Below, in pieces: positions 27,301 to 64,000 of a DNA stretch of 64,000 bases. A program made the position numbers and the translations under genes. Position 1 is the stretch's first letter. Every line of letters begins with the position of its first letter. This DNA is from Pavona decussata (Eukaryota): the NCBI GenBank assembly GCA_977016875.1, contig CDRNST010000064.1, positions 2,356,001-2,420,000 on the forward strand, in the 5' to 3' direction. The notes under the pieces are model-generated. The model did no database searches. It worked only from the letters and a program-made list of their open reading frames with translations, and was not told the origin of the DNA.

Positions 27301-28732
27301 AGTTGTGAGAATGTACGTGACATCTGAGTTGCAAAAATCTGGCATTCAAGTACAATCCACCAAAGCCCTCACACATGTAAGTCTCATATGTTAAGCCAAC
27401 AGTAAACTTTTTTCAATAAACAATACTTGGGAGGCACCTTCACTTAGAAGGGCTTTGTAAAAATCTGGCCGCTGTATACCACAGGGCACATCAGCCATTA
27501 TTAATACAACAAAGGAATTTTACCTGAAGTGATGTTCATCATTCTTTGCACAAGTGACCTGCACTGCTCCTCCCAGCTGTAAACCTTGGCATACTCTTCA
27601 CAGATAGACTTCATTTCCACAAGTCGTACATTTCTTCTTTTCTGACGGACACTCCTGATTGCCTCAGCCCACCTGTTAGGATCGTCTGAATCCACTACAC
27701 AGATTGAAGCATGAGGCACATTCTTAAGAGCTTCTCCAAGACCAGAGTTGCCACTTACAAGCACAGGAAGACCAGCAGATAGAGCTTCAAGAGCAGGCAG
27801 CCCAAACCCCTCAGATCTTGATGGCATTATAGCAAGATCTACCTCACAAAACTGCTCAGCCAACTGCTCTCTTTCTTTGAAACCACGTACAACTAGTTGA
27901 TCACGGGAAATGCCTTGCTTAAGCAACATTTCTGCTACTTGCTGCTCTCTTCCACTTTGTACTCCAACAACCTTCAGTTTGTAGGGCTGTGACATGTCTT
28001 TCAACTTTGCAATTGCCTGAGCAGCAATGTCATAACCTTTCAGCTGCAAGTCTTCACTGCCACCACTCCCTAGCAACAGAACAGAAAATGTTCTTCTTTC
28101 TTCAGAAGCTTCCTTCACATCAGCAAACTCAGAGAAGATGCCTGGGGTGAGGTTGAGAACATTTTGATCTTTCTGGAAGGGACGCAGATATCCTGAGAAA
28201 GCTTCCTCCAGCTTGGGTCCAACTGCTACAACTTGATCAGACAATTCACAGAGTTTGACTTCTAATCTGTGCTTTTCCTCTCCTTTAGAAACAGCATCTG
28301 CATTGGTTTTGAACATTCCAAGCTCTTCAGGGTCAGTGTGGACAACCTGAATCCATTTACAATCATATTGGCGTTTTATCAGTTGCGCTTGTTTCCCGAG
28401 TTGGACTCCATGTCCAATCACACAGTCCACAGCATGATGAGCTGGTAGAGAGGACAACCAAAGATCTGGATTTATACCATGCAGTTTTTCTGCTTTAATG
28501 AGATGGACATTGTGACCAGCAGCAACTCTTTCATCCTCTTCACTGCATTCAGGGAGATAGACACTGGCTTTCACATCAGGGAACTTTGCCAACTGAATGG
28601 CGAGCTCTCTATTGATGGTTGACACACCTCCTTTTGTTGACCTCCATTCACTGGTTAGAAGAGTTACGTTCAATGTTCTTCTTGAGGACAAACTTGGGGC
28701 TTCCTCTCCATTACCTTCCTGTGATGTAGAGG
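14090..28732 (-). CDS. NLR-A: GT4 glycosyltransferase - linkers - OTU - linkers - NACHT - LRR (~2,100 aa; first exon not located; 1-bp frameshift at ~14349)
   Basis: In-frame exon chain: 27524-28732 (GT), 26879-26971, 26557-26658, 24523-24615 (linkers), 24051-24310 plus 22460-22721 (OTU), 21272-21364, 20927-21019 (linkers), 14090/14326-18380 (NACHT-LRR). All junctions are GT-AG and phase-compatible. Inclusion of each linker exon is predicted, not proven. Confidence 0.8.
14455..15290 (-). repeat. Coding tandem array of ~9 x 93-bp (31-aa) LRR units in NLR-A
   Basis: Consensus LASNKSLHTLTLTINxYSGxxxxWIxxLxxG; nucleotide period of 93. Confidence 0.93.
18639..20560. mobile_element. Non-autonomous DNA transposon (~1.9 kb) in an NLR-A intron
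   Basis: Perfect 16-bp TIR CAAGGCTGTGCTCTAA / TTAGAGCACAGCCTTG; internal ~270-bp direct repeat (~18700-18955 / 18970-19225); TSD unclear. Confidence 0.7.
20927..21019 (-). CDS. 93-nt phase 1-1 linker exon (R6) of NLR-A
   Basis: GFFGGSQSSVAVNSQLPFPAASQTHLTSGIQ; acceptor TTTTCCCCTCTGAAG, donor GTTGGT. Confidence 0.65.
21272..21364 (-). CDS. 93-nt phase 1-1 linker exon (R5) of NLR-A
   Basis: GFSGGSQSSVAGYSQSPFPAASQTHLRCGTE; same acceptor and donor context as R6. Confidence 0.65.
22460..24310 (-). CDS. OTU deubiquitinase-like domain of NLR-A (exons 24051-24310 and 22460-22721)
   Basis: Cys-loop GSGNCMFYALSEQL, LRQxIVQYLxxN, YLxxMxxDGTWGD, His-loop HHYVSL; phases 1-0 and 0-1. Confidence 0.88.
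23140..23305 (-). repeat. Degenerate tRNA-derived repeat in the OTU intron (paralogous copy ~59850-60010)
   Basis: Reverse-complement similarity to the 55474-55900 unit (ATACTGCTAGGATTTGAATGT, CACTCAGCTACAGGA). Confidence 0.55.
23462..24017. mobile_element. Foldback MITE with ~190-bp TIRs and a 7-bp TSD (P-element-like termini)
   Basis: GTTAGAC|CACAGGCGTCCCAAGCTCACG ... CGTGAGCTTGGGACGCCTGTG|GTTAGAC. Empty site with a single GTTAGAC in paralogue B at ~60163. Confidence 0.9.
24523..24615 (-). CDS. 93-nt phase 1-1 linker exon (R4) of NLR-A
   Basis: GFSVGSQSSVAVNSQLPFPTASQTHLTSETE; donor GTAGGT. Confidence 0.72.
26030..26065 (-). pseudogene. Truncated remnant of a linker exon (R3)
   Basis: Only ACTGAAGACTGACTTCCACCAGAAAAACCTTCA remains; the 3' half, the donor and the pyrimidine tract are lost. 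Confidence 0.6.
26276..26486. mobile_element. Small palindromic MITE
   Basis: TIR CCCAAATGACTTTTCAGATCGCTTTTT and its reverse complement. Confidence 0.65.
26557..26658 (-). CDS. 102-nt phase 1-1 linker exon variant (R2) of NLR-A
   Basis: GYSVGFSPSSVAGYNQLPVTFPVTSQTYLRSGTE; indels preserve the frame. Confidence 0.62.
26879..26971 (-). CDS. 93-nt phase 1-1 linker exon (R1) of NLR-A
   Basis: GLPERRHSSVAGYSQLPFPAASQSHLASGTE; donor GTAGGC. Confidence 0.72.
27524..28732 (-). CDS. GT4 (Glycos_transf_1, MshA-like GT-B fold) glycosyltransferase exon, N-terminal domain of NLR-A
   Basis: 1209-nt phase 1-1 exon. Contains KGGVSTINRELA, VVHT, KGYD and the intact E-x7-E motif PSRSEGFGLPALEALSAGLPVLVS; ends YSWEEQC. 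Confidence 0.92.
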
Positions 28733-37699: not shown

Positions 37700-39800
37700 A
37701 ACAATGGCCTCAGGGAGGCAGTTCCAGTCGGCTATAGGTCTTGGAAAAAAAAAACGAAAATTTAAAAATGTCCTTACTTCCATATGACACGGGAAATTTA
37801 AATTGACGGCTTCCCCTCGTGCGACTCTCGGGGTGATGAATTAAATATTTTCGGCTATCTATATCAATAAGATCGTGAGTCATTTTATACATAAGTGTTA
37901 GTCTAAACTGCCTTCTTCTTGTTTCCAATGTGGCCCACCCTAAGTTTTTAATCATGTCCGTAACATTCCCATAACTGTTGTAATTTTCTGAGCAGAACCT
38001 TGCCGCCCAAGAGACTATGAGGTCTTTTGTGCCGCCTTACGCTGAACCCTTTATAGAGCACTGATATCTTTCTTTAAGAAGGGGTCCCAAGCCGCGCTTT
38101 CGTTTTCCAGCTTCGGTTGTATATAGGGATGTATATGCAATTTCTTTTACATTCTTTGGACAATTCCAAAGGTTTCGTTCTATTGTACCCAGCGATTTGT
38201 TTGCTTTAGCTGCTGTTATAGAAACATAAGCTGACCAATTGAGCTTGTTACTGATAGTAACCCCAAGGTATGGGAAGCTATCAACCTGCTCTAACTCTAC
38301 ACCACAGAAGATATATTTTCTCAGGGGCGGATTGATCTTATGTGAGATGGTAACAATTTTGCAATTAGAAGAATTGAACTCCATTTGCCAAAGGTGCTGC
38401 CAGGATTCTAGCCTGTGTAAGTCAGATTGAAGAAGATCGCAGTACGCGTCGCTTGCGACAATGCCGTAAAGTAAAGCATCGTCCGCAAAAAGCCTAACTG
38501 ATGATTGCCCGTTATCTGGTAAGTCGTTTATGTATCATAAAAAGAGCAACGGCCCGAGGACTGTACCTTGGGGAACACCGGAAGACACTGGACATTGACT
38601 TGATGTTTGGCCTTCACAAACAACTGATTGAAAACGTTGGGTAAGAAACGACTCTAACCAATTTAGGAGCGGGCCTTGGATTCCATAGTGCTGCAGCTTT
38701 CTCAGGAGTCGCCTATGAGGGACCTTGTCAAAGGCTTTGGCAAAGTCCAAGACGACCTCGTGGATAGATGAGCTCTGAATAGTCTTTGCCATATCGTGTA
38801 AGGTGAGAATTAGCTGCTTCTCTGTGGATCTCTTTGCCCTGAAACCATGCTGACAATCCGTTAAGATGTTATGGTCGTTTAGATGTTTCATAATGAAGCT
38901 GTGGACAATATGCTCGAGGATCTTTGATGCAACACAGGTGAGAGATATAGGTCTATAATTGGCTGGGTCAGATTTCTTTCCCTTTTCAAAAACTGCACAC
39001 ACATTTGCCTCCTTCCACCTATAGGGAACAGTGACACTGTCTGTCGAGTCCTGAAAGATGACTTTTAATATTGGAGCGATTTCTGCAGCAAAATGTTTGA
39101 GAAACCAAGGTGGGATTTGGTCTGGGCCACAGACCTTGTTAGGGTTTAATGAAGACAGTTGCTTTAAAACTCCTTACAGTTCTGAAACAATTAAAGGCCA
39201 GGTTTGAGATTTGAGCCCATATCTGGAATGTTTTCAAGGTCCTCCTTGGTAAATACACTTGAAAACTGGCTGTATAAGATTTCTGATTTAAGAGCACTAT
39301 CACTTATGACTTTACCATCCACTTCAAAGTCTGCATCCTTGGATTTTGTTGATTAAGCCGTTTTACGTAGGACCAAAAGCGTTTAGGGTTGTCTTTGATT
39401 GACTCACTAAGGTGGCCACTGATATACTCTTCCCTTGCAGACTTAAAGATTATTTTGTATGCGTTTCCTGGCGGCAAAAAACTTGTTCCAGTGGTGTACA
39501 GATCCCGTTTTCTTTGCCTTGTTGTTTAGTCTTTGTTTCACTTTAGACTGTCGCCGAAACGAGCGATTCAACCAAGGTAAGTTGTATCTTGAACTTGTCA
39601 TCTTATGCGGGATGCAAGAGACCATTATGTTGCGAACACTATTTTCAAAATCATTCCACTTCGCTTCCACCGAGTTGTTATCATATTGAGTGTTGAGCTT
39701 TGCAGCAAGTGCTTGTAATTTCAATTTAATATGCTCATCGTCCGATCCCTTTCTGATATAAACTTTACGCTTAACATGCCGTTTTTTCTGGCAAAATTCG
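37700..39800 (-). mobile_element. Decayed, 5'-truncated non-LTR retrotransposon (CR1-group LINE) reverse transcriptase
   Basis: Frameshifted fragments with NYRPISLT, QHGFR, LDFAKAFDKV, GVPQGTVLGPLLFL, LFADD, YLGVTI, LGWxTLExRR. Confidence 0.9.
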
Positions 39801-53700: not shown

Positions 53701-54932
53701 TTCTTGGAATGTTTTATGGAAGAAGTGGTATTCGTGTTGTGGGTTGATCTTTTTCAAACTGGCTTCCTTGAAAACGAAACCTGATATCCGAGCTGCCAGA
53801 TCTTTATACATCTCTTCAAATTTTGCAAGTTCTCCTTCACGAAAAGAAAGACGATCTTCTAACAGGCAGTTCCAAGCTAACTCCCCTAGTGCAAGTAAAC
53901 TCTGCTCAAATTTCTTCTCAAGAGCCTCGTCATCCTGGGGAGCTTTCAACTTATTTTTTGCACAGAATCTTCGTAAAATGCAACGAACAATAATCTGATA
54001 GAGCTCAGTACGGCGAGATGGAAGTTCTCCCTCGTAGTCCTCAAAAACGACACAAAGAAGAAGTAAATTCAGTGGATTGTTTGGTAAAGCATGAAGGAAA
54101 GAGTTTTCCCGGATTGCTTTGATAAGCCTCTCTCCTTTTGACAAATGTTCGGGCCCCAAAAGTCTGAAGTGCTTTCTGATATACTCAAAAGCATCTTTGT
54201 CAGAAAATCCTTCTATTTGCAAAAGGACATCAAAGTTAATGTTCTGTCTCAATTCTATTCCTCTCTCTTGACGCGATGTCCCCAGAAGAAAGCAGAATGG
54301 AAACATTCGTCTGTGAAGCAATCTATCCACGTGATGTTCAGCACCTACAGGTAGCTCGTCAAGGCCATCCAAAATTATAAGAACTTGTTCTTGGTTATGG
54401 ATATCCTGGATGTAATCCCTCAACTCTTTCTTGACGTCGTCATCTTCAGGCAGAAGTTGTTCATTGATGGCTTTTATTATGCTTCCATCAATGTCCCGGC
54501 ATTTCAGAAGTAACACAATATTAAATTCAGGAAATGAACACCCTTTCGGAATTTTTCCATTTGCCCAATCATAGGCTATTTTAAGACAGAAAGTTGTCTT
54601 GCCAATCCCTGGGCTTCCCTCTACCAGCACTGTGGAATCTTCCCCTTTATTTAAAGTGTTAAAGATGTCATACACCTCCACTTCACTATTTTTAAGCTGA
54701 ACACCTCCTGGGAATATCGTATGACGCCGCATTCCAAAGCTGTTGAAGATATCATACATAGCCACTTCGTTATTTTCTAGCCGAAAGTCTGTTTTTCGTC
54801 TTGATAGCATTTTCAATCTTGTATAGACATCTTCAAGAGGTAACTTCAAGGTGTTCTCCCAAAGAAGGGGTCTCAAAAGAGACCGCCTGTTATACTATGC
54901 CTTTAGAAGTCTGACAACAGGGTTATCTTGCC
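50701..54932 (-). CDS. NACHT-LRR terminal exon of NLR-B (intact)
   Basis: GSPGIGKTT, LIILDGLDE, LGTSR, NPLNLLLLC, FFHKTFQEHLAA, then LRRs to SLFGEEEMY*. Phase-1 acceptor at 54932. Confidence 0.95.
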
Positions 54933-57900
54933 CTACAACAAAACAGCAATCACAGTCAAAGATATTCTCTGCGTAGAACAGTTTACTGAAAGCATAACTT
55001 TTAACAGACTGCTCGTGTATGAACTTTCACTTTGATTTGCGCAAGCTTGGTGTCAAAATACATGAATTTGTTCTGAGTGCAAAATAAAAACCTAATAACC
55101 TCCCAACTTCGAATTTAAGTGGTAAATTGCCAGACGTCGCATCTACTTAAACATGGAAACATGGTGGTTGTTTAACTGGCATTTCAATAACACGTGAAAT
55201 CTGAAGACTCAGCCACTGTTATGCGGCTTTCAGTTCTCTGCCACCGTTAATCACAGAACACGTCTTAGAAAACAAAGAAATTCAGCTTAAGACCGACGAT
55301 GTTGAGATTGGCAGATTTCGATCCATTCTGTTAGTTTAAGTGTTAATGGTGTCCCGTTGTTGTCTCCTTAATCATGATTGACAGAAGGTGGGATTTTAAG
55401 ATCAGAGTCTGCATGTTATTCAGTGAAAGGCGCTGTAAAATTTAAAACTTAAATACCTTAAGTACCAACTAAAGTAACTCAGTGGTAGAGCATCCGAACT
55501 AGTAATCAGAAGGTCTTAGGTTCGACTCCTGATAGGAGCACTTGGATTTCTTTTTTCCGAGTATGCCTGCGTCACTTTCTAGAATAATCATCATTCTCAT
55601 TCATTCATCAGGCTGGAAGTATACCATCACATTTCTTTCACATACCACACGTTCGACATTCAAATCCTAGCAGTATGCAGGATGTTTGTCCCATGAACCT
55701 AGTTTAATGGCCTTAGCTCCTGCACGAGTCTCCTGTAGCTCAGTGGTAGAGCATCCGAACTAGTAATCGGAAGGTCTTAGGTTCGACTCCTGATAAGAGC
55801 ACTCGGATTTCTTTTTTCTGAGTATGCCTGCCTCACTTTCTAGAATAATCATCATTCTCATTCATTCACCAGGCTGGAAATATACCATCACATTTCTTTC
55901 AAATCCCATTACTTTTTCTTAGCACTGCCCTTCAGTAAGTCTGGGGGTAGCAGTAAGATACATGTATCAAGATTTCGCTTTGTGTTTATGCAGCAACATA
56001 GCTGCTTTCAAGAAATAGAGGACACAGCTTCAACCTTATCCCAGAATCTTTGTGACACTTGTCATTTTTAACTCGTGAAAATGCGCATACGCATTGTATT
56101 TGGTTGGCCCAGGACTCGAAATATAAGTCGTATTTGACACTGTCTTATTCAGTTATTCCGTATTCTACGCCGCTTAGATTTTAGCCTTTCCGCTCAGCGA
56201 GATTGAACTTCTTGAATAGTTTTATAATTTTTAAGAAAGTTTTAATTTGGAAAATAGTTTGGAGCCTTAAAGTGGTTGGCTTTCAAAGGCGAGTAAAAGG
56301 GAAAAAATATCTCCATTACCTCAGGAGGTTTGAACTCGGGAGCCTTCACTTCAATCGCGGTCTTGAGGAAATTTCAACGGCGGAATGCGGTGCTTTACTC
56401 ACCAAAATAAAAACGTACAAAGACTATATACATCTATCGAGTGTTCTTTAGGCTATTTCTTTCTTAAAAATTGGAAAAAGAAAAAGAAAAAATTATATAT
56501 CTATTATCTCAGGAGGTTTGAACCCGGACACCCTTCGCTTCAATTTCGGCCTTACGGGGCTTACAACGGCAGAATGCGGGGTTTCTCTCTCCAAAAAAAG
56601 AAAAAAACGTACGAAGACTAAATACATCGGTCGAGTTTTCTTTAGGCTATTTCTTTTAATTTCAAACTCCAAAAAAATGTGAAATGTTATAATTGAAGGA
56701 GGAGAGAAACTTAAGCGAGCCGTGAAACCATATTTGAAAGTTTACAGCCCATTGAGTGATCAGTGGAACGAGCGAGTGACATTTCCCCCACATTATGATA
56801 ACTCGTTCATTGTGCATGCACACATTCACGAGTTAAAAATAAGCCTTGCACTTCTACAGTAATTATTATCAATTTCTCTAAGAGTACCACATGGCAAAAC
56901 AGATAATACAACATCTTCTTGACTATATATTCTGCCAACATAGCACATTTTTCAGCTGCTATAAATACATATAAATTAAGGACTTCTACATTTATAGGTA
57001 GTTACCTCTAGAAACAAGAGTAAACGGTCTCGGTCTCTTGGAAGTCTGAGTAGCACTAGGACATGACCTTTTCTTGTTTAATGATGTCTCTTCCCTAGAA
57101 GAATCTGGAATGAAAAATAACAAACAAGAAGATAGAACGACTGGGTTCAAGGTTTTAGGCGGCTGACTGTTTCAGGCAACATATGAGCACTCACTTCTTG
57201 GGAAAAAAAAGGATGAAGAAGTAAAATTGCACTAAATCCTTTAGAAATATTACCAGACACATGCTTCTAGGATGCTTGTATGAGAAAACAGATGCCTTTT
57301 GTTTTCCGGCTAAGGTGTCTGCTCTCGCTGACTACTAGTATTGGTTGCCTAGTTAATTCCTGGCTAGAGGCCTGACTAGGGTCACTCTAGGTTAGTCTGT
57401 CACCTCTAACAGTCCTCCCAAGACAACAAGTGTATATCGAATACAAGTATTAATACTTATTATGTGCATTGCCCTTTTGGTCATCCATAACATCTATAAT
57501 GTTATCGATCACTTTCGAAGGGAAGATGTACATTCAGAGCTGTCAACCTCACACGTCTTTAAATATGGAGAATATGACTTCCCCGGCCATCAATAACAAA
57601 GCGCCTTCCGTTCAGTTGGGTGGGGGACGTACATTAAACAGTACCAGAAACAACGCTAAACATTGCATAATATGCAGAAAATGTTATTTTCTTGCAGAAA
57701 AGTCGACTCTACGATAAAAAGCTAATTTCGTTAATTATCCGGGAGATTAGAGACATAAATCTGGAGACCAGAAGATACGGCTCAAAATCTGGAGATTACA
57801 GACATACATCTGGAGACCGGGAGATAAAGTTCAAAATCTGGAGACTCCCGGATTATCCAGGAGAGTTGACAGCCCTGTTTAACATTGTTCTCATTACTCA

Positions 57901-60900
57901 TTTTAAAAATTCATCGAATGTCTCACGCGTGAAAGTTATAATGAATTCTAGTGCCTGTTTTCTTAGCTCCTTCCTTACAAGACGGAAAAAAATCCTCAAT
58001 GGCATTAATGTCAGGCTTCAGGCGGGTATACGTACATGTAAACTACTATTGAAAGGCCTAGTGCAAAATAAGTGCAAGTAGCAATGTGGCCTTAACAATC
58101 CAAATTTCTCTAAATTTGCACTTATTTAGCATGCACACTTTTCATTCCATATTTGAAAACAAAACTTTCTAATAAAATAACAGAACTGTAGGCCAAAGAA
58201 GGCCGTTCTTTGGATAAATTTGAATTCTACGGGTAAAACCCTTAAAAAATAATTTAAAATAATTAATAAAATAATTAAAAACAATTAAAATAATTCAAAA
58301 TAATTAACAAAATAATTAATATTGTTAATTAGTTACAACACTTTTACTTTTTTTAAGAAGGCCTTGAAAAGGAATAAAAAACGCAAGTTACTACATGTAT
58401 ATTATGGCACAAATATGTGCCCGTTTTCAAAACTGGTATCTGCCCACCTTTAAACAGGTGTATAAACTTCAATAAATATTGAAGTGATAGTTAAGTAGAC
58501 AAATCTGGTTAGCTGGCATTGTTTTACATAATAAGTTCCTCTACCTGGCTTAGATCGAAGGCTGACATAGTGATGTTCATGCAGGTGTCCCAACACAAGC
58601 TGGCTGCTGCTGCTAACATCATGTTCTGGGTGGATAGTTAAGTCATGTGACAGACTGCTGATCACGTGAATGCATGTTTTAAAGCAGTTTGCTGCAGCAT
58701 GGAGAATGACGTGGTCACCCCATGTCCCATCTGCTGCCATGTTTCTTAGGTAATCAGGCCAAGACTGATGTCCATGTACAAAGTTAAACAGTTCCGTGCC
58801 ATCTTGCTGCAAGAGAACAACAAAACAATTAACAAAAAATGTCAAAGTACATTGTGCAACTTCATCCAATGATCAACTGGAGGGTAAAGCTTTTCACTAA
58901 ATTTGGCGAGTGCAGCGATCTGCAACAAACCAAATTATATTGACATTTTAGCATAAAATAAAGGTTAATGTTGGCAAGCAACAACTATTGAGCCTGCATT
59001 ATTACTGCGGTCCACCCTTAACATGTGACTTCCCTATACGGCAGCCTGCTTTGCATCTTATTCTGTGCCAGTCTTTTCAATCGCCACTTTCTTGGAAGGC
59101 TGCAAGTTGAGCAGCCATAACATTAACTGAAACATGTTAACTGTTTCATAATTGAACAACTGAAACATTGGATACAATGCACTTTCAGAGCTTTACTTCG
59201 CTTTAACCCTTTAACCCCTAAGGCAAAACGACATTTTCTCCAGATCCAAGACTACAAGCTCAAGGTCTATGTATGATAAACCATTTTAAAGCTACTCATG
59301 AGTGTATTTCATAACTGATATAATTATGAACGAGAAAAGTTATGGCTTTGAGATAAATGGCCTTAAAACATAAAAATTTAAAACTTCAAAAACGTCCCAA
59401 TCCTTGTGTATATTAGGTATACCCCTAAACTATAGCTTATTTTGCAGGTCTCAACATCTTCATTAATGTGAGAGATGTCTTAAGACCCACAACTTATAGG
59501 GGAAAAAAGTTGAAAAGTTATGGGGGTGGTCAACCATACCACATATGGGAGGGGGTTAAGTTTTTATCCTTTTAATGAGTAGATTTTCACAAGAGCATCT
59601 TGGTGTCAAAAATTCATAGAAATCTGTCAAATATTGACAGAGTTGTGGCATTATGTGCCAAATGGCACTCTTAGGGATTAAAGGGTTAAGTATCCACATG
59701 ATATCAGCCTTTGAGTAATGTACCAACTGTCCAAGAAAATTAGCAACCATAATCTTTAGAATTTGACTTCTGCCTTCTCTTGCAAAATGACAATTAAGTT
59801 TTATCTTGATAGAGGAATTTTCAGTCAGTGACACAGGCATAATGTACTCAGAAAAAGAAACTCTGAATTCTTCCCCCTAACAGAGTTGAACCTTTGACCT
59901 TCCATTTGGATGTTATAGCACTCAGCTACAGGAGACTTGTGGGAGCTAAGACCATTAAACTACATTCATGCAGTGATAAACATCTTTATACTGCTAGGAT
60001 TTGAATGTGATAATATTATTATTGTGTTTATCGTGATGAATCCACAGTAGAGGTATATTTTTCAGTCAGTCACTTTGGCATACTTAAAAAAGAAACTCCT
60101 AATTCTTAAATTGAATTGCTTTTCTAGATTTGTATAACCATAAAATGAAACCAAACTCACTTGTTAGACATTGCCAATACTAACATACCAGTGTAGGGTT
60201 CCCCTTGAGATATTGGACTATGTGTTGCCTCAATGCTTCATGAGAGATTTGGATTCCTTTCACCAGGTCCAGTTGTTCTGACAATGCGTAAAACATGCAA
60301 TTCCCTGAACCTTTGTTGCCCGAAATTTGGAAGCCTTTCTCTGAAGCAATTTTCTTTAACCCCTCTAGAAGTTGTGTCTCGCCGATGATCTTGCCTGCAT
60401 CATATCGCATTTGCTCAAGACCACGGAAAATTTGTTCAGCTCTCATACCTAAACCACCAAAAGGAATGACAAGTGTTTTTCCAAAAACCCTATTACTATA
60501 ATTATATAGAGTATACAAGTATCAAAAATCCAAATAGTATTCAACAAGACATACATGTAGTAATTACATAGCTAACAGTTTTTGCAAATGTTACATGTAC
60601 ATGTTGGCAAATTGTTGTGAAAAGTAATTCTGCCTACCTTCTGTTCCACTTGTCAGATGACTTTGAGAGGCTGCAGGGAAAGGAAGCTGACTGTAACCTG
60701 CTACTGAAGACTGACTTTCACCAGAAAAACCTTCAGAGGGGAAAATTGTAATATGCAAACTTGTATGTTATTATACTCATAATGAAAGACACTGGATGTT
60801 CTTCATTTTGATTGTTTCTGTGTCATGTACCCTAAACTATAATTTACAGAAATAATATACGAATTAGATGATGGTTTCACTGACACACACTGAGTTCTCC

Positions 60901-63900
60901 TCTGCAGAGGTTACATTTGGCTGGTAAACCAGCCAGTAAAATTGAACTAGAAAAAACTAATAAAATATACGTCTACTGATATGATATCACTGTTTATGTA
61001 ATGTTTATTTTTTTTTAATTCACTGTAAGATTGGAATAATACTTATTGATATAGAAATGAACTACGTAGTTTTAAAAAGGATATCTTGTGTTTCTGTGAC
61101 CTCGGCAGGTTCTTGGAGCTCTGTTCTCTGGCAAGGTTGAATGACAACTGATGTCAGTGGCCAGGCAATGGTCCTTTTTTACCAGAACTTCTGGTTTAAG
61201 ATTTTCTATCCTTTTACTGTTCACGTACATGAACAAGTTTTCCTTGACAAGTTTTGTTTTTATTATTTTGACTTGTTTGACTTAATTTACACAACGCAAC
61301 ATATATAAAACTTGCCAAGTTCAGACTTGTTGAGGAAATCATTATTTTATCATGTACATGTACAACCTTGAGGCTCCTTAAAAGGCCATAGAATTATCTA
61401 CAAAGTCAGAAACATCCAAAGTGCTATAATTTGTTCTAGTTATTTGACCTCTCGTGAAAGTATAGGACTAAGTATTACCTGCATAATGTACAATTGAGCG
61501 TTTGCTTGGATCTGTTATACTCGAAACAGATGATACATGTATCGTCCTTTCTGGAGCTAACACATCTTGGGGACAGAAATGATAATCATTAAAGTAAGCC
61601 AATTTGTGGCTGCAATGTGTTAATGATGATGTTGAGGGTAATTAAATAGAAATGTCCTCTGAGACCAGATTCAAATCAAGATCAATATGTAAAACATGTG
61701 CAGTGTGAAACAATCCTGGAGAAAATTATTATTAATTGCATAATAAGAACCTACATCCCAAGCAACAGTACAGAGGTATTTTACAGAATGCCGAACACAG
61801 AATATCTCATTTCCTTCAAACTCTATTTCAACGTAAAGGTTAAAAGGCGACTTTAAATATCGCTCAGTAAAAATTTCAACCGATTGTGTTGCGAGAATAT
61901 AAAGTCTCAAATTGCAAACAGTCATTACAGTACCACACAAACAGAGGGTGGTCTGCCTGTGATTTTACGCTACCTCCATGTACATACCTGTAACACAGTT
62001 TAGGGTTTAACAACAAACTATATTATTTTGGTCTATTTAGCACTCTTCTGTACAATTTAGGGTTTTAAAAAGCACTGCTTATACAGACAGTCGGCTTTAA
62101 GTTTTTGTGATGGCAGACATTTGACATTACAGGACGTCTATGGATTCAGTGTTCAGAGTTCTGCAAAATATGTCCCCTGCTCGTGCAAGCAACATGAATT
62201 CAATGTAACAGCTTACCTCCAAAGTGCTGCCAATCTTTGAAAACCAGTGTATCACTTAGAATGTGAGCAGTAAGGGAAGCAGCCATTATGCTAGCAAAAG
62301 GTCTCCATGAATCTGTTTTATGCTTCTTGCCATCAGCAAAGTCTGAGACACCTTTGATGACAACCCATTCAACATCCAGGTCATGTGCTGCGGTATACAG
62401 ACCTAAAAAGATGTACATAACATGTGTCCCTCTGTGAGATTAAGCAAACAGGAAAAAATAGAAAGCAAGTGATTAAGACAGCCAGTATATTCAAATATTA
62501 ATATTCTACAAGAAGAGATTTAGGTCTGAGCACATGTTGGTCTATAGCTTCAAAATGGTTTCCCTTGACATGCCTGTTCTCCATCAGACACAGTGGCCGG
62601 TCACTAATAAGTTGTTCAATGAGAGCTGTCACTGTTAGACAAACCAGATTGCAGGAAACCATCAAAGGCGACCGGATCTCTTATATTCACCAAGAAAAGG
62701 CAGAGCAAGATTGCCTGAGGTTGGCTACAAGTTATTATGCCCCCAGAGAGATGACTACTACATGTATTTACCATCAGTAAAAAAAATGATCACAGGAACA
62801 GATCATTATTTCAGCAGGTGGTGGTGGATTGATTACATCTCATCAAGAACATTATCAAAATGAACAATTAGCACTTGAATACCACTAGCTTGGTGCTATC
62901 AAGCAATACAAAAGGCACAGGGAGAGGGTAAAAGATAGCTGCCAAAGAATACTCGTAATTATTGTCAAGAAGTCTGACTGAGCAAATGCACTTGGGTAAA
63001 AATATTCACAAATTCTGCAACATGTTTTAGATTGTAATGTATATCTCACTGTAACTCTCCCTTGAACTTAACTTTTGAAACTCCGACGTATGAAATATAT
63101 AATAATCAGTCTAAACATACCAGCTCTATGTGAAACTGCCATCCTAATTATAGAATATCCATTATTTGCGACACAATACTAAATCAGTCTGCAAGTTAAA
63201 GTTACAAAAATGTACAAGCCATAAAACCACAACCTAACTCAAATAAATTATTTATCTCACCACCATGTAGCCTAGGTGTTGTTTGCCGATTCAATGTTTA
63301 TGGTGCAATAGTTGACACCATCGCCTGATAAAGGTCAGCACTTTATTGACCAGCACCTACATTGTATGCTACACAATAGTGTGACAAACAATTCATTTGA
63401 GCTATCAATTTGAACAACAATGACAAACACCTTTCATGAAATGTCTTCTCTTTTGAAACTTTACATTTGATATCCCTACTGCTATGTTGTAATTGTTAAA
63501 CCAGACACACCCTTACCTTCGCCTTCCAATTCAATTGCAACTGCTTGAGGAAATCGTTTGATGAGCTGATTACATCTTTCCTTGTTATCAACTTCCTCTG
63601 GGCCGCTCAGGAACACACCATCTCGGTGCACCTCTACCTCTAGTTTTCCTGGGTCTTTCAAAGGTGCCTCCCAGCCTTCATTTGCATTCTGTACTAGTTT
63701 TGCAAGACGCTTTTTCAAAGGAACACTAATGCCACATTCTTCGATTCCATCCTGAGTAACCTTGCTAGGGGCATAGGTTATCAACTTTTTTGAGACAACA
63801 ATGTCTCCCAGCTTCACTCTTTTGTCATCTAAGCCACTACAGAAACCCACATTGAATAGAGCTTTGGGCCTTAAGATCTTCACAGCATTTAGTACTACAA

Positions 63901-64000
63901 CTGCAGGTCCTTGAATGCTGGAGGAACCCTTATCGCATTTAATTACTGCAATTTTCTGCCTCATCTCATCGCCACCAATATCTCCAAAGTACACAAGACT
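50701..64000 (-). CDS. NLR-B: PNP_UDP (MTA/SAH nucleosidase-like) - linker - OTU - NACHT - LRR; 5' end outside the window
   Basis: In-frame exons: 63517 to beyond 64000 and 62217-62402 (PNP), 60638-60730 (linker), 60189-60448 plus 58545-58806 (OTU), 50701-54932 (NACHT-LRR, stop). All junctions are GT-AG and phase-compatible. Confidence 0.83.
50975..51810 (-). repeat. Coding tandem array of ~9 x 93-bp (31-aa) LRR units in NLR-B
   Basis: Same consensus as in A; includes a near-perfect 186-bp two-unit duplication. Confidence 0.93.
55474..55900 (+). repeat. Tandem tRNA-derived (SINE-like) repeat, ~261-bp unit, ~1.7 copies
   Basis: A box TAGCTCAGTGG and B box GGTTCGACTCC occur twice (~55474, ~55736). 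The anticodon loop is 8 nt (ACTAGTAA) and the acceptor stem is poor, so this is not a functional tRNA. Confidence 0.75.
56315..56655. repeat. Two-copy ~180-bp tandem duplication
   Basis: CTCAGGAGGTTTGAA ... TCTTTAGGCTATTTCTTT occurs twice. Confidence 0.7.
58545..60448 (-). CDS. OTU deubiquitinase-like domain of NLR-B (exons 60189-60448 and 58545-58806)
   Basis: GSGNCMFYALSEQL, DGTWGDH, HHYVSL; exon sizes (260 and 262 nt) are identical to NLR-A. Confidence 0.88.
59207..59685. mobile_element. piggyBac-like MITE specific to the NLR-B OTU intron
   Basis: TTAA|CCCTTTAACCCCTAAG ... CTTAGGGATTAAAGGG|TTAA. Empty TTAA site in A at ~22962. Confidence 0.85.
60638..60730 (-). CDS. 93-nt phase 1-1 linker exon (R7) of NLR-B
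   Basis: GFSGESQSSVAGYSQLPFPAASQSHLTSGTE; donor GTAGGC. Confidence 0.75.
62217..64000 (-). CDS. PNP_UDP_1 / MTA-SAH nucleosidase-like domain of NLR-B (exons 63517-64000+ and 62217-62402)
   Basis: RPKALFNVGFCSGL..KLGDIVVS, GVFLSG, AVAIELEGEG|LYTAA, WVVIKGVSDFADG, WRPFASIMAA follow the motif order of the nucleoside phosphorylase-I fold. Confidence 0.88.

What the first reader, a model, noticed from the sequence alone, without database searches (positions are those of the whole stretch)
60520..60790. Effector-swap breakpoint maps to a linker exon with mosaic flanks
Seen: on the OTU side, B's intron (60450-60637) aligns with the intron beside A's R4 (24311-24522). On the effector side, B reads GCAAACTTGTATGTTATTATACTCATAATGAAAG. 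This matches the flank of A's R5 (GCAAACTTGTATGTCATTCTACTCATAAAGAGAG, ~21395-21428), not the flank of R4 (GCAAAATTAGCCAACAAAGC). Beyond this point A and B are unrelated (GT vs PNP). Inference: a crossover between non-allelic linker copies joined a different effector to the OTU-NACHT core.
Basis: partly seen in the sequence, partly recalled or inferred. Interest (0 to 1): 0.75.

Follow-up and report, generated by a model that had tools for sequence, protein, structure and literature searches.

The report
Recombined linker exon joins coral NLR modules
In a large tandem array of stony-coral immune-receptor (NLR) genes, a 93-base "linker" exon repeated at least about 100 times is the point where different enzyme heads (sugar-transferase or nucleosidase) join a shared OTU-NACHT body. 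The copy in this finding is a true recombinant, but the event is old and shared by eleven genes, not a recent swap between the two genes in the window.

Summary
The linker exon of gene B (60638-60730, minus strand) is followed by the same intron and OTU exon as linker R4 of gene A. The 42 bases at -70..-29 before it belong to the flank class of A's R5. Trees of the two flanks disagree significantly (p-AU 0.0005 and 0.0015), so recombination between about -29 and +99 of the exon is the best explanation.

The interpretation needs three corrections:
- The junction is not private to B. All 11 PNP-OTU-NACHT paralogues of a tandem array of at least 40 genes (contigs C64, C162, C142) carry it, so it arose once before that subfamily expanded, not between A and B.
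- A's R5 is only one of at least 50 copies of that flank class. In glycosyltransferase-headed genes the class lies only after the OTU module, never before it (0 of 40).
- Crossover and gene conversion cannot be told apart, and no parental or reciprocal form was found.

All modules are phase 1-1. The exon is 89% identical among copies, against 34-45% in its flanks. Effector shuffling and tandem duplication in coral NLRs are already published. The linker-exon junction itself was not found described.

The scan noted the repeated linker on this window before; a word search of its notes on other DNA found no linker effector-swap note.

The parts
60638..60730 (-). Linker exon R7 of gene B: 93 nt, phase 1-1, encoding a Ser/Gly/Gln-rich 31-residue spacer.
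   Evidence: Sequence and translation. Family-wide splice sites, length and open frame. Near-identical in all linker classes, 0.91-0.95.
60731..60758 (-). Acceptor region (-1..-28: polypyrimidine tract plus AG), shared by all linker classes. Together with the exon it forms the ~121-nt tract in which the recombination junction must lie.
   Evidence: Identity 0.89-0.96 to PNP-type, GT4-type R4 and post-OTU linkers alike. Alignment.
60759..60800 (-). U5-class upstream flank (-29..-70). This is the class of A's R5 and of post-OTU linkers generally.
   Evidence: Identity 0.78 mean to 23 post-OTU U5 linkers, 0.55 to GT4-type R4, null 0.48. The 27-mer gives 60 hits, all in the cluster. Positional table. 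Upstream-flank tree.
60801..62216 (-). PNP-specific part of the intron between PNP exon 2 and the linker. It is shared only with the other PNP-type paralogues.
   Evidence: At -110..-71, identity is 0.94 to PNP-type siblings but 0.23 and 0.17 to the other classes. Sibling homology runs on to window ~61043-61812.
62217..62402 (-). PNP exon 2 (186 nt, phase 1-1), the C-terminal part of the nucleosidase domain. It is the coding exon immediately upstream of the linker.
   Evidence: ORF; boundaries. 134 genomic matches were found; all 11 cluster PNP genes have one at 88-100% identity, downstream of PNP exon 1. On its own it is too short for Pfam.
63516..64000 (-). PNP exon 1 (PNP_UDP_1), running off the window end. 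Its donor is in phase 1.
   Evidence: Pfam E 3.7e-6 and 8e-6. Donor mapped.
60449..60637 (-). D4 intron between the linker and OTU exon 1. It is homologous to the intron beside A's R4 (24311-24522).
   Evidence: Identity 0.82-0.84 to GT4-type R4 against 0.44-0.65 to post-OTU linkers. Downstream-flank tree.
60189..60448 (-). OTU exon 1 of B, carrying the catalytic Cys motif. With OTU exon 2 (58545-58806) it forms a phase 1-1 module.
   Evidence: Translation, Pfam OTU, boundaries (the 3' end of exon 1 was read by eye).
24523..24615 (-). A's R4, the pre-OTU linker of the GT4-type gene. It has a U4 flank and the D4 intron.
   Evidence: A U4 31-mer lies between GT4 and OTU in 35 of its 38 genomic hits.
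21272..21364 (-). A's R5, a post-OTU linker with a U5 flank.
26879..26971 (-). A's R1, the first linker after the GT4 exon (which ends at 27524). R4 and R1 share the exon, ~220 nt upstream and ~65 nt downstream.
   Evidence: Self-BLAST 24518-24838 vs 26874-27183 (78%) and 26811-27006 vs 60573-60765. GT4 donor.

Best explanation
**Setting.** The window lies in a tandem, same-strand array of at least 40 NLR-like genes of a stony coral. Each gene reads: enzyme head (GT4 glycosyltransferase or PNP nucleosidase), linker exon(s), OTU, usually further linker exon(s), NACHT, repeats. Every module is bounded by phase-1 introns. The 93-nt linker exon plus 28 nt of its acceptor region is the only stretch that is near-identical at all positions of all genes.

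**B's linker cassette is a three-part mosaic:**
- PNP-specific intron up to -71.
- A -70..-29 flank of the class that otherwise sits only after the OTU module.
- The common core, followed by the pre-OTU intron and OTU exon found in GT4-headed genes.

**Proposed mechanism.** Non-allelic homologous recombination within the ~121-nt common core, by unequal crossover or by a conversion tract. It would have joined a PNP head carrying a NACHT-proximal-type linker to the R4-OTU part of a GT4-type gene. This happened once, in the ancestor of the 11 present PNP-OTU-NACHT genes. The junction was then copied by tandem duplication, and later exchanges reshuffled the cores.

**Shown:** the mosaic, the incongruence of the two flanks, the sharing by 11 genes, and the positional specificity of the flank classes.

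**Inferred:** the recombination mechanism, its polarity (the PNP type is the recombinant), and that it was a single event.
For: - **Flank incongruence.** AU tests reject the concordant groupings on both sides.
- **Segment profile** of B's cassette: -110..-71 matches only PNP-type genes; -70..-29 matches post-OTU U5 linkers (0.78) but not GT4-type R4 (0.55; null 0.48); -28..+93 matches all classes; +94..+240 matches GT4-type R4 (0.82-0.84) but not U5 linkers (0.44-0.65).
- **Positional specificity**. U5 flank: 0 of 40 hits in GT4-headed genes lie before OTU (24 lie after it, 16 are in genes with no detected OTU). In PNP genes 10 lie before OTU, plus an 11th seen only at sequence level. U4 flank: 35 of 38 hits lie between GT4 and OTU, none before OTU in a PNP gene.
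- **Single origin.** All 11 PNP-type genes share the junction and more than 110 nt of upstream intron. Their monophyly over the 620 nt downstream of the linker is not rejected (p-AU 0.39).
- **Polarity.** A 16-nt downstream motif occurs in 12 of 16 GT4-proximal linkers, in 0 of 21 other U5-flanked linkers, and in 6 of 11 PNP-type cassettes. R4 resembles R1 on both sides. The GT4-type cassette is therefore class-consistent and the PNP-type cassette is the hybrid.
- **Homology substrate.** Exon mean pairwise identity is 0.89, against 0.34-0.45 in the flanks.
- **Other chimeric cassettes exist.** U3|D4 at C64:2140736, U5|D1-like at C64:2040649, U3|Dx at C162:410347.
- **Frame compatibility.** All modules are phase 1-1.
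Against: - No gene with PNP-linker-NACHT and no OTU (the predicted parent) was seen, and no clear reciprocal product. The only candidate is a U4 flank after OTU at C64:2911551, which could not be fetched.
- The exon is too homogeneous to place the junction inside it, so 'in the exon' really means 'within -28..+99'.
- The flank groups were defined after the sequences had been seen, and the upstream partition has only 75 columns.
- Only 5 GT4-type pre-OTU cassettes were available as sequence. The other GT4 genes were classified from coordinates of motif hits. Those searches score only the best candidates, so counts are lower bounds.
- No RNA evidence for this genome could be obtained.
Confidence: 0.68

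Rival explanations
1. No recombination in the linker. A cassette with a U5 flank and the D4 intron is the ancestral pre-OTU arrangement. The PNP head was grafted onto it by a break in the intron at about -71. The GT4-type genes later acquired their U4 flank, for example by conversion from R1 or as part of the GT4 module's own trailing intron.
For: There is a real second boundary at -71, upstream of which B matches only PNP-type genes. R4's upstream flank is a copy of the GT4-proximal R1 flank over ~220 nt, so the GT4 side also carries head-specific intron right up to the acceptor region.
Against: No GT4-headed gene has a U5 flank before OTU (0 of 40 U5 hits). The D4 intron carries the motif typical of GT4-proximal cassettes, which is absent from all 21 other U5-flanked cassettes. 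This scenario still needs an exchange at the linker on the GT4 side, so it changes the polarity rather than the mechanism.
Confidence: 0.2
2. Divergence only. U4 and U5 are orthologous flanks that drifted apart, and B's resemblance to R5 is retained ancestral sequence without any exchange.
For: All cassettes share -28..+93, and the flank classes may be distantly related. GT4-type R4 reaches 0.55 against a null of 0.48 at -70..-29.
Against: The two flanks give significantly conflicting trees. All four combinations of flank classes exist (U5|D4, U4|D4, U5|Dx, U4|Dx), which needs at least one exchange. The strict positional distribution of U5 and U4 is not expected from drift.
Confidence: 0.07
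3. Chance similarity or an assembly artefact.
Against: The flank 27-mer has 60 hits against 0 in the control. Eleven independent loci on three contigs share the junction at 87-91% identity, not 100%.
Confidence: 0.02

Closest known systems
Coral NLR expansions with glycosyltransferase (GT1/GT4) heads. Described by Hamada et al. 2013 (MBE), read here only as summarised in PMC4083563; also PMC8195603 (Kaur et al. 2021) and PMC12314368 (Acropora T2T assemblies, 2025).
   Same: Same gene type: GT4/glycos_transf_1, then NACHT, then repeats. Same tandem clustering. Published inference that N-terminal effector domains were shuffled after the NACHT-repeat types diversified, with NAHR proposed as the motor of array expansion. 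The closest named proteins are from Stylophora, Oculina, Desmophyllum and Orbicella.
   Different: The passages retrieved from those papers by term searches do not describe a junction at nucleotide level, a repeated symmetric linker exon, the PNP/GT4 alternation on one OTU-NACHT core, or flank-class mosaics. The OTU module between head and NACHT was not found described in the papers searched (an earlier scan note, s1-480710, says the same).
Zebrafish NLR-B30.2 family: N-terminal ~30-residue peptide repeats (PMC4852459, Howe et al. 2016).
   Same: A large, clustered NLR family. It has short repeats of about 30 residues N-terminal to the NACHT domain, variable in number and of several types. The types associate with different NACHT groups, which the authors read as exon shuffling. 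Gene conversion acts differently on different parts of the gene.
   Different: A vertebrate family with different domains (Fisna, B30.2). The repeats are not reported as spacers between alternative enzymatic heads, and no breakpoint was mapped to a repeat.
Exon shuffling through symmetric (phase 1-1) exons that encode disordered segments (PMC3632108, Schad et al. 2013; the classical Patthy model, from general knowledge).
   Same: The linker, PNP exon 2 and the two-exon OTU module are all phase 1-1. The linker peptide is low-complexity (Ser/Gly/Gln/Pro). Modules occur in different orders and numbers without breaking the frame.
   Different: Classical exon shuffling recombines within introns. 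Here the conserved exon itself, not the intron, supplies the homology, and the same exon is reused at least about 100 times (258 candidate matches) within one family.

Membership tests
Symmetric-exon (phase 1-1) exon shuffling | The module is bounded by introns of the same phase, so insertion, deletion or exchange keeps the reading frame. | tested here: met
   Linker 93 nt, phase 1-1. PNP exon 2 is 186 nt, phase 1-1. OTU exons 1 and 2 together are phase 1-1. The GT4 and PNP exon 1 donors are in phase 1.
Symmetric-exon (phase 1-1) exon shuffling | The same module is found next to different neighbours in paralogous genes. | tested here: met
   Linkers follow GT4, PNP exon 2, OTU exon 2 or another linker. 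The R2/R3-type block is pre-OTU in gene A but post-OTU in the gene at C64:2.04 Mb.
Non-allelic homologous recombination in a tandem gene array | Direct-orientation paralogues in tandem. | tested here: met
   At least 40 genes, all on the minus strand: C64 1.42-3.18 Mb, C162 0.33-0.73 Mb, and C142.
Non-allelic homologous recombination in a tandem gene array | The sequences on the two sides of the junction have conflicting genealogies. | tested here: met
   AU tests: upstream, PNP-type with GT4-type R4 is rejected (p 0.0005); downstream, PNP-type with U5 linkers is rejected (p 0.0015).
Non-allelic homologous recombination in a tandem gene array | A tract of high identity at the junction. | tested here: met
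   -28..+93 is 0.89-0.96 identical across classes. Exon mean pairwise identity is 0.89, against 0.34-0.45 in the flanks. The tract is short (~121 nt).
Non-allelic homologous recombination in a tandem gene array | An identifiable parental arrangement and a reciprocal product (or, for gene conversion, a donor). | tested here: inconclusive
   No PNP-linker-NACHT gene without OTU appears in the coordinate map. GT4 genes with no detected OTU exist, and there is one U4 flank after OTU at C64:2911551.
Animal NLR with an enzymatic N-terminal effector (coral GT4-NACHT type) | A NACHT NTPase domain. | tested here: met
   PF05729, E 1.6e-23 for gene A and 8.3e-25 for gene B.
Animal NLR with an enzymatic N-terminal effector (coral GT4-NACHT type) | An N-terminal enzyme domain encoded in the same gene and spliced to the NACHT part. 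| not testable with these tools
   The domains are present: GT4-conflict E 6.4e-84, PNP_UDP_1 E 3.7e-6, OTU. Splice sites and phases fit. No RNA data could be obtained. Oculina patagonica RefSeq models join GT4, linker-like repeats and NACHT in one protein.

The most novel reading that the evidence does not exclude
The linker exon family may be more than a passive spacer. It may be kept near-identical at the DNA level as a recombination adaptor that lets this coral NLR array exchange enzyme heads and the OTU module in frame. In its favour: 89% identity, no extra variation at third codon positions, 53 different peptides among 56 copies, yet never a stop codon. Such exchange might still be polymorphic between haplotypes.
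Probability: 0.2. Interest if true: 0.75.

Novelty: new member of a known kind. Interest (0 to 1): 0.5.

Why it matters
Corals rely on very large, fast-changing families of NLR-type receptors. How new combinations of sensor and effector arise is usually inferred only from domain lists. Here a junction can be read at base level. A short, symmetric, highly homogenised exon sits at every module boundary, and two heads with different predicted chemistry (glycosyltransferase and nucleosidase) are attached through it to one OTU-NACHT core.

This gives a concrete, testable model for effector diversification in an animal immune gene array. It also gives markers for tracing such events across haplotypes and species: the flank classes U4 and U5 and the D4 intron.

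It does not change the general picture, since shuffling and NAHR in coral NLR arrays are already published.

Tried and rejected
- **More genomic sequence.** I tried to fetch the N-terminal regions of 20 GT4-type genes, 10 PNP-type genes and 8 outgroup PNP genes, plus the stretch beyond the window end. From then on only coordinates from the genome search were used.
- **Junction inside the exon.** The exons of all classes are too alike for diagnostic sites.
- **A U5-type linker next to PNP exons of other families** (C114, C233, C486 and others). None was found within ±1.5 kb, and the flank 27-mer occurs nowhere outside the cluster. A donor from outside the cluster is therefore unsupported.
- **Pfam on PNP exon 2 alone.** No hit, because the exon is too short. 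A genome-wide protein search confirmed it instead.
- **Regular-expression classing of flanks** was crude. It was replaced by segment identities, pattern searches and trees.
- **Hamada et al. 2013** is not held in the library. It is cited only through PMC4083563.
Full report
**What is in the window.** Two paralogous genes lie on the minus strand.
- Gene A reads: GT4-conflict glycosyltransferase exon (28691-27524), linkers R1-R4, OTU exons, linkers R5 and R6, then the NACHT exon (18324-14326).
- Gene B reads: PNP_UDP_1 exon 1 (beyond 64000 down to 63516), PNP exon 2 (62402-62217), one linker R7 (60730-60638), OTU exon 1 (60448-~60189), OTU exon 2 (58806-58545), then the NACHT exon (54876-50701).
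- Sources: Pfam; ORFs; boundaries.
- A and B are 83-90% identical from the repeats up to the linker, and unrelated upstream of it.
- Best named protein matches are stony corals (Stylophora, Oculina, Desmophyllum, Orbicella) at 65-68%, so this is a scleractinian genome.

- BLAST, nhmmer and MAFFT find seven linker copies in the window.
- B's intron after R7 aligns with the intron after A's R4 (part of an 83%, 635-nt match).
- The 34-mer before R7 matches the flank of A's R5 at 29 of 34 positions, and does not match R4's flank.
- At -70..-29, R7 matches R5 at 0.79, and R4 and R1 at 0.48. Shuffled controls average 0.48, with a maximum of 0.76 in 350 trials.

**The linker is a coding exon by every sequence criterion** (70 copies sampled).
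- 62 copies are exactly 93 nt. The six variant lengths (66, 87, 96, 99, 102) are multiples of three; one further copy is cut by the end of its locus.
- AG acceptor in 68/70 and GT donor in 64/64.
- The phase-1 frame is open in 63/63. The other frames carry stops in 38/63 and 63/63.
- The peptide is a low-complexity spacer.
- An HMM of these peptides hits the repeats of about 32 residues between GT4 and NACHT in Oculina patagonica RefSeq proteins. The listed isoforms of those proteins differ in length, one pair by 64 residues, about two repeat units. This fits real, skippable exons.
- No RNA data for this genome could be obtained.

**The family context changes the reading.**
- The genome holds 258 candidate matches to the linker query (49 scored matches). 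At least 137 PNP exons and 213 candidate GT4 exons (105 scored) were found genome-wide.
- Coordinates of the GT4, PNP, OTU and NACHT exons define a tandem array, all on one strand, on C64 (1.42-3.18 Mb), C162 and C142. It holds about 30 GT4-OTU-NACHT genes with 11 PNP-OTU-NACHT genes interspersed.
- Ten other loci match B across the whole junction at 87-92%. Their homology continues into B's upstream intron, as far as window 61043-61812. Each is paired with a PNP exon 1 of at least 79% identity and a PNP exon 2 of at least 88%.
- The junction is therefore the common junction of a subfamily, not a private feature of B.

**Anatomy of the cassette**.

| Segment | vs PNP-type siblings | vs GT4-type R4 | vs 23 post-OTU U5 linkers |
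|---|---|---|---|
| -110..-71 | 0.94 | 0.23 | 0.17 |
| -70..-29 | 0.93 | 0.55 | 0.78 |
| -28..+93 | 0.95-0.96 | 0.91-0.95 | 0.89-0.91 |
| +94..+240 | 0.83-0.88 | 0.82-0.84 | 0.44-0.65 |

There are thus two boundaries. The other lies somewhere inside the ~121-nt common core.

**Formal incongruence**.
- In a tree of -75..-1, the PNP-type cassettes fall with the U5 linkers (support 100/99.8). Holding them with GT4-type R4 costs 32.9 lnL (p-AU 0.0005).
- In a tree of +99..+260, they fall with GT4-type R4 (98/98). Holding them with U5 linkers costs 86.4 lnL (p-AU 0.0015).
- Caveats: the groups were named after inspection, and the upstream partition is short.

**Positional specificity of the flank classes**.
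- A 27-mer of the U5 flank (up to 3 mismatches) has 60 hits, all in the array, and none in the control.
- In GT4-headed genes none of the 40 hits lies between GT4 and OTU: 24 lie between OTU and NACHT, and 16 are in genes with no detected OTU.
- In PNP genes 10 hits lie between PNP and OTU, and an 11th carries a small insertion and was seen only at sequence level.
- A 31-mer of the U4 flank has 38 hits. Of these, 35 lie between GT4 and OTU, and none lies before OTU in a PNP gene.
- B's linker therefore carries an upstream flank that otherwise belongs to NACHT-proximal linkers.

**Polarity** (inferred).
- R4 resembles the GT4-proximal R1 on both sides: about 220 nt upstream and about 65 nt downstream.
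- A 16-nt motif downstream of the exon is present in 12 of 16 GT4-proximal cassettes, in 0 of 21 other U5-flanked cassettes, and in 6 of 11 PNP-type cassettes. The other five PNP-type cassettes have lost that segment.
- The GT4-type cassette is class-consistent and the PNP-type cassette is the hybrid.

**The same thing happened elsewhere.**
- C64:2140736 combines an R3-type upstream flank with the D4 intron.
- C64:2040649 combines a U5 flank with an R1-like downstream flank.
- C162:410347 combines an R3-type upstream flank with a post-OTU-type downstream flank.
- A 1-kb block holding R3, R2 and R1 of gene A (pre-OTU there) lies after OTU in the gene at C64:2.04 Mb.
- The number of linkers per gene varies from 1 to at least 14.
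- Core and head do not co-vary. Over its first 400 residues, B's NACHT exon is 99% identical to that of a gene at C64:3163660 with a divergent GT4 head, but only 74-94% identical to those of other PNP genes.
- Close to the junction the PNP genes still look like one group (monophyly not rejected, p-AU 0.39).

**Why the exon is the junction.**
- Mean pairwise identity is 0.89 for the exon, 0.69 for -28..-1, and 0.34-0.45 for the outer flanks. It is the only shared homology between non-equivalent positions.
- Variation is not concentrated at third codon positions (entropy 0.26, 0.35, 0.29), and 53 of 56 peptides differ.
- This points to DNA-level homogenisation plus a simple need to stay open-reading, rather than selection on a precise peptide.

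**Verdict.** The mosaic is real and significant. Recombination in or beside the linker exon is the best explanation (about 0.7). It is an old, single founding event of an 11-gene subfamily within a family that shuffles modules at linkers generally. Whether it was a crossover or a conversion is open, and no parent or reciprocal product was found.

**Relation to the literature.** Shuffling of N-terminal effectors, tandem duplication and NAHR in coral NLR/GT arrays are published (PMC4083563 summarising Hamada 2013; PMC12314368; PMC8195603). Shuffling of ~30-residue N-terminal repeats is known in zebrafish NLRs (PMC4852459). Symmetric exons that encode disordered segments are known to promote modular evolution (PMC3632108). 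I found no description of this linker exon family or of the PNP/GT4 junction.

**Limits.**
- Genome sequence beyond the first 60 loci was not available. Most GT4 genes were therefore classified from motif coordinates only.
- The searches score only the best candidates, so all counts are lower bounds.

Noticed in passing
window 50701-54876 (B's NACHT exon) compared with G000:C64:3163660-3164859: Over its first 400 residues, B's NACHT exon is 99% identical to that of a gene with a divergent (75%) GT4 head at C64:3.16-3.18 Mb. It is only 74-94% identical to the NACHT exons of the other PNP-type genes. B therefore has a second, recent mosaic boundary between OTU and NACHT.
   Followed up: partly
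window 55087-58311: Between OTU exon 2 and the NACHT exon, B has no linker exon, unlike A and most siblings. The interval is unique or repetitive: a 174-nt tandem duplication (55474-55647 / 55735-55908, 94%) and an inverted fragment of the OTU intron (55656-55837 vs 60008-59827).
   Followed up: partly
L003, L004, L005, L006, L007 (linkers at C162:378003 and C64:2647723, 2922882, 1666923, 1825163): Five PNP-type paralogues share a 5-nt insertion near the 3' end of the linker exon. It creates a new GT donor 6 nt further upstream, giving an 87-nt in-frame exon if that donor is used. Using the old donor would shift the frame.
   Followed up: no
G000:C204 (e.g. 1865374-1875485), C87:53391-64147: Another NLR subfamily (NACHT ~40% identical to B's) has the heads in the opposite order, OTU-PNP-NACHT. 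Its OTU exon is 72% identical to B's. This is seen from coordinates only and matches the earlier scan note s1-480710.
   Followed up: partly
G000:C64:3040043-3065479: One GT4 gene with no detected OTU has at least 14 U5-flanked linkers between the head and NACHT. Some are spaced exactly 2114 nt apart (3044422, 3046536, 3048650), suggesting recent tandem duplication of a multi-linker block.
   Followed up: no
window 38535-39002 (-): A reverse-transcriptase ORF (RVT_1, E 1.4e-25) lies in the spacer between genes A and B: a retroelement inside the array.
   Followed up: no
window 23460-23674 vs 24019-23800: A 220-nt inverted repeat pair at 94% identity lies in A's OTU region (between OTU exon 1 and exon 2). 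It may be a small foldback element or an inversion-duplication.
   Followed up: no
P0093, P0095, P0096, P0097 (Oculina patagonica RefSeq isoforms): Isoforms of GT4-NACHT genes in another coral differ in length (for example 64 residues between two isoforms of one gene, about two repeats). The ~32-residue repeats between head and NACHT match the linker HMM. This suggests that linker exons are alternatively included.
   Followed up: partly
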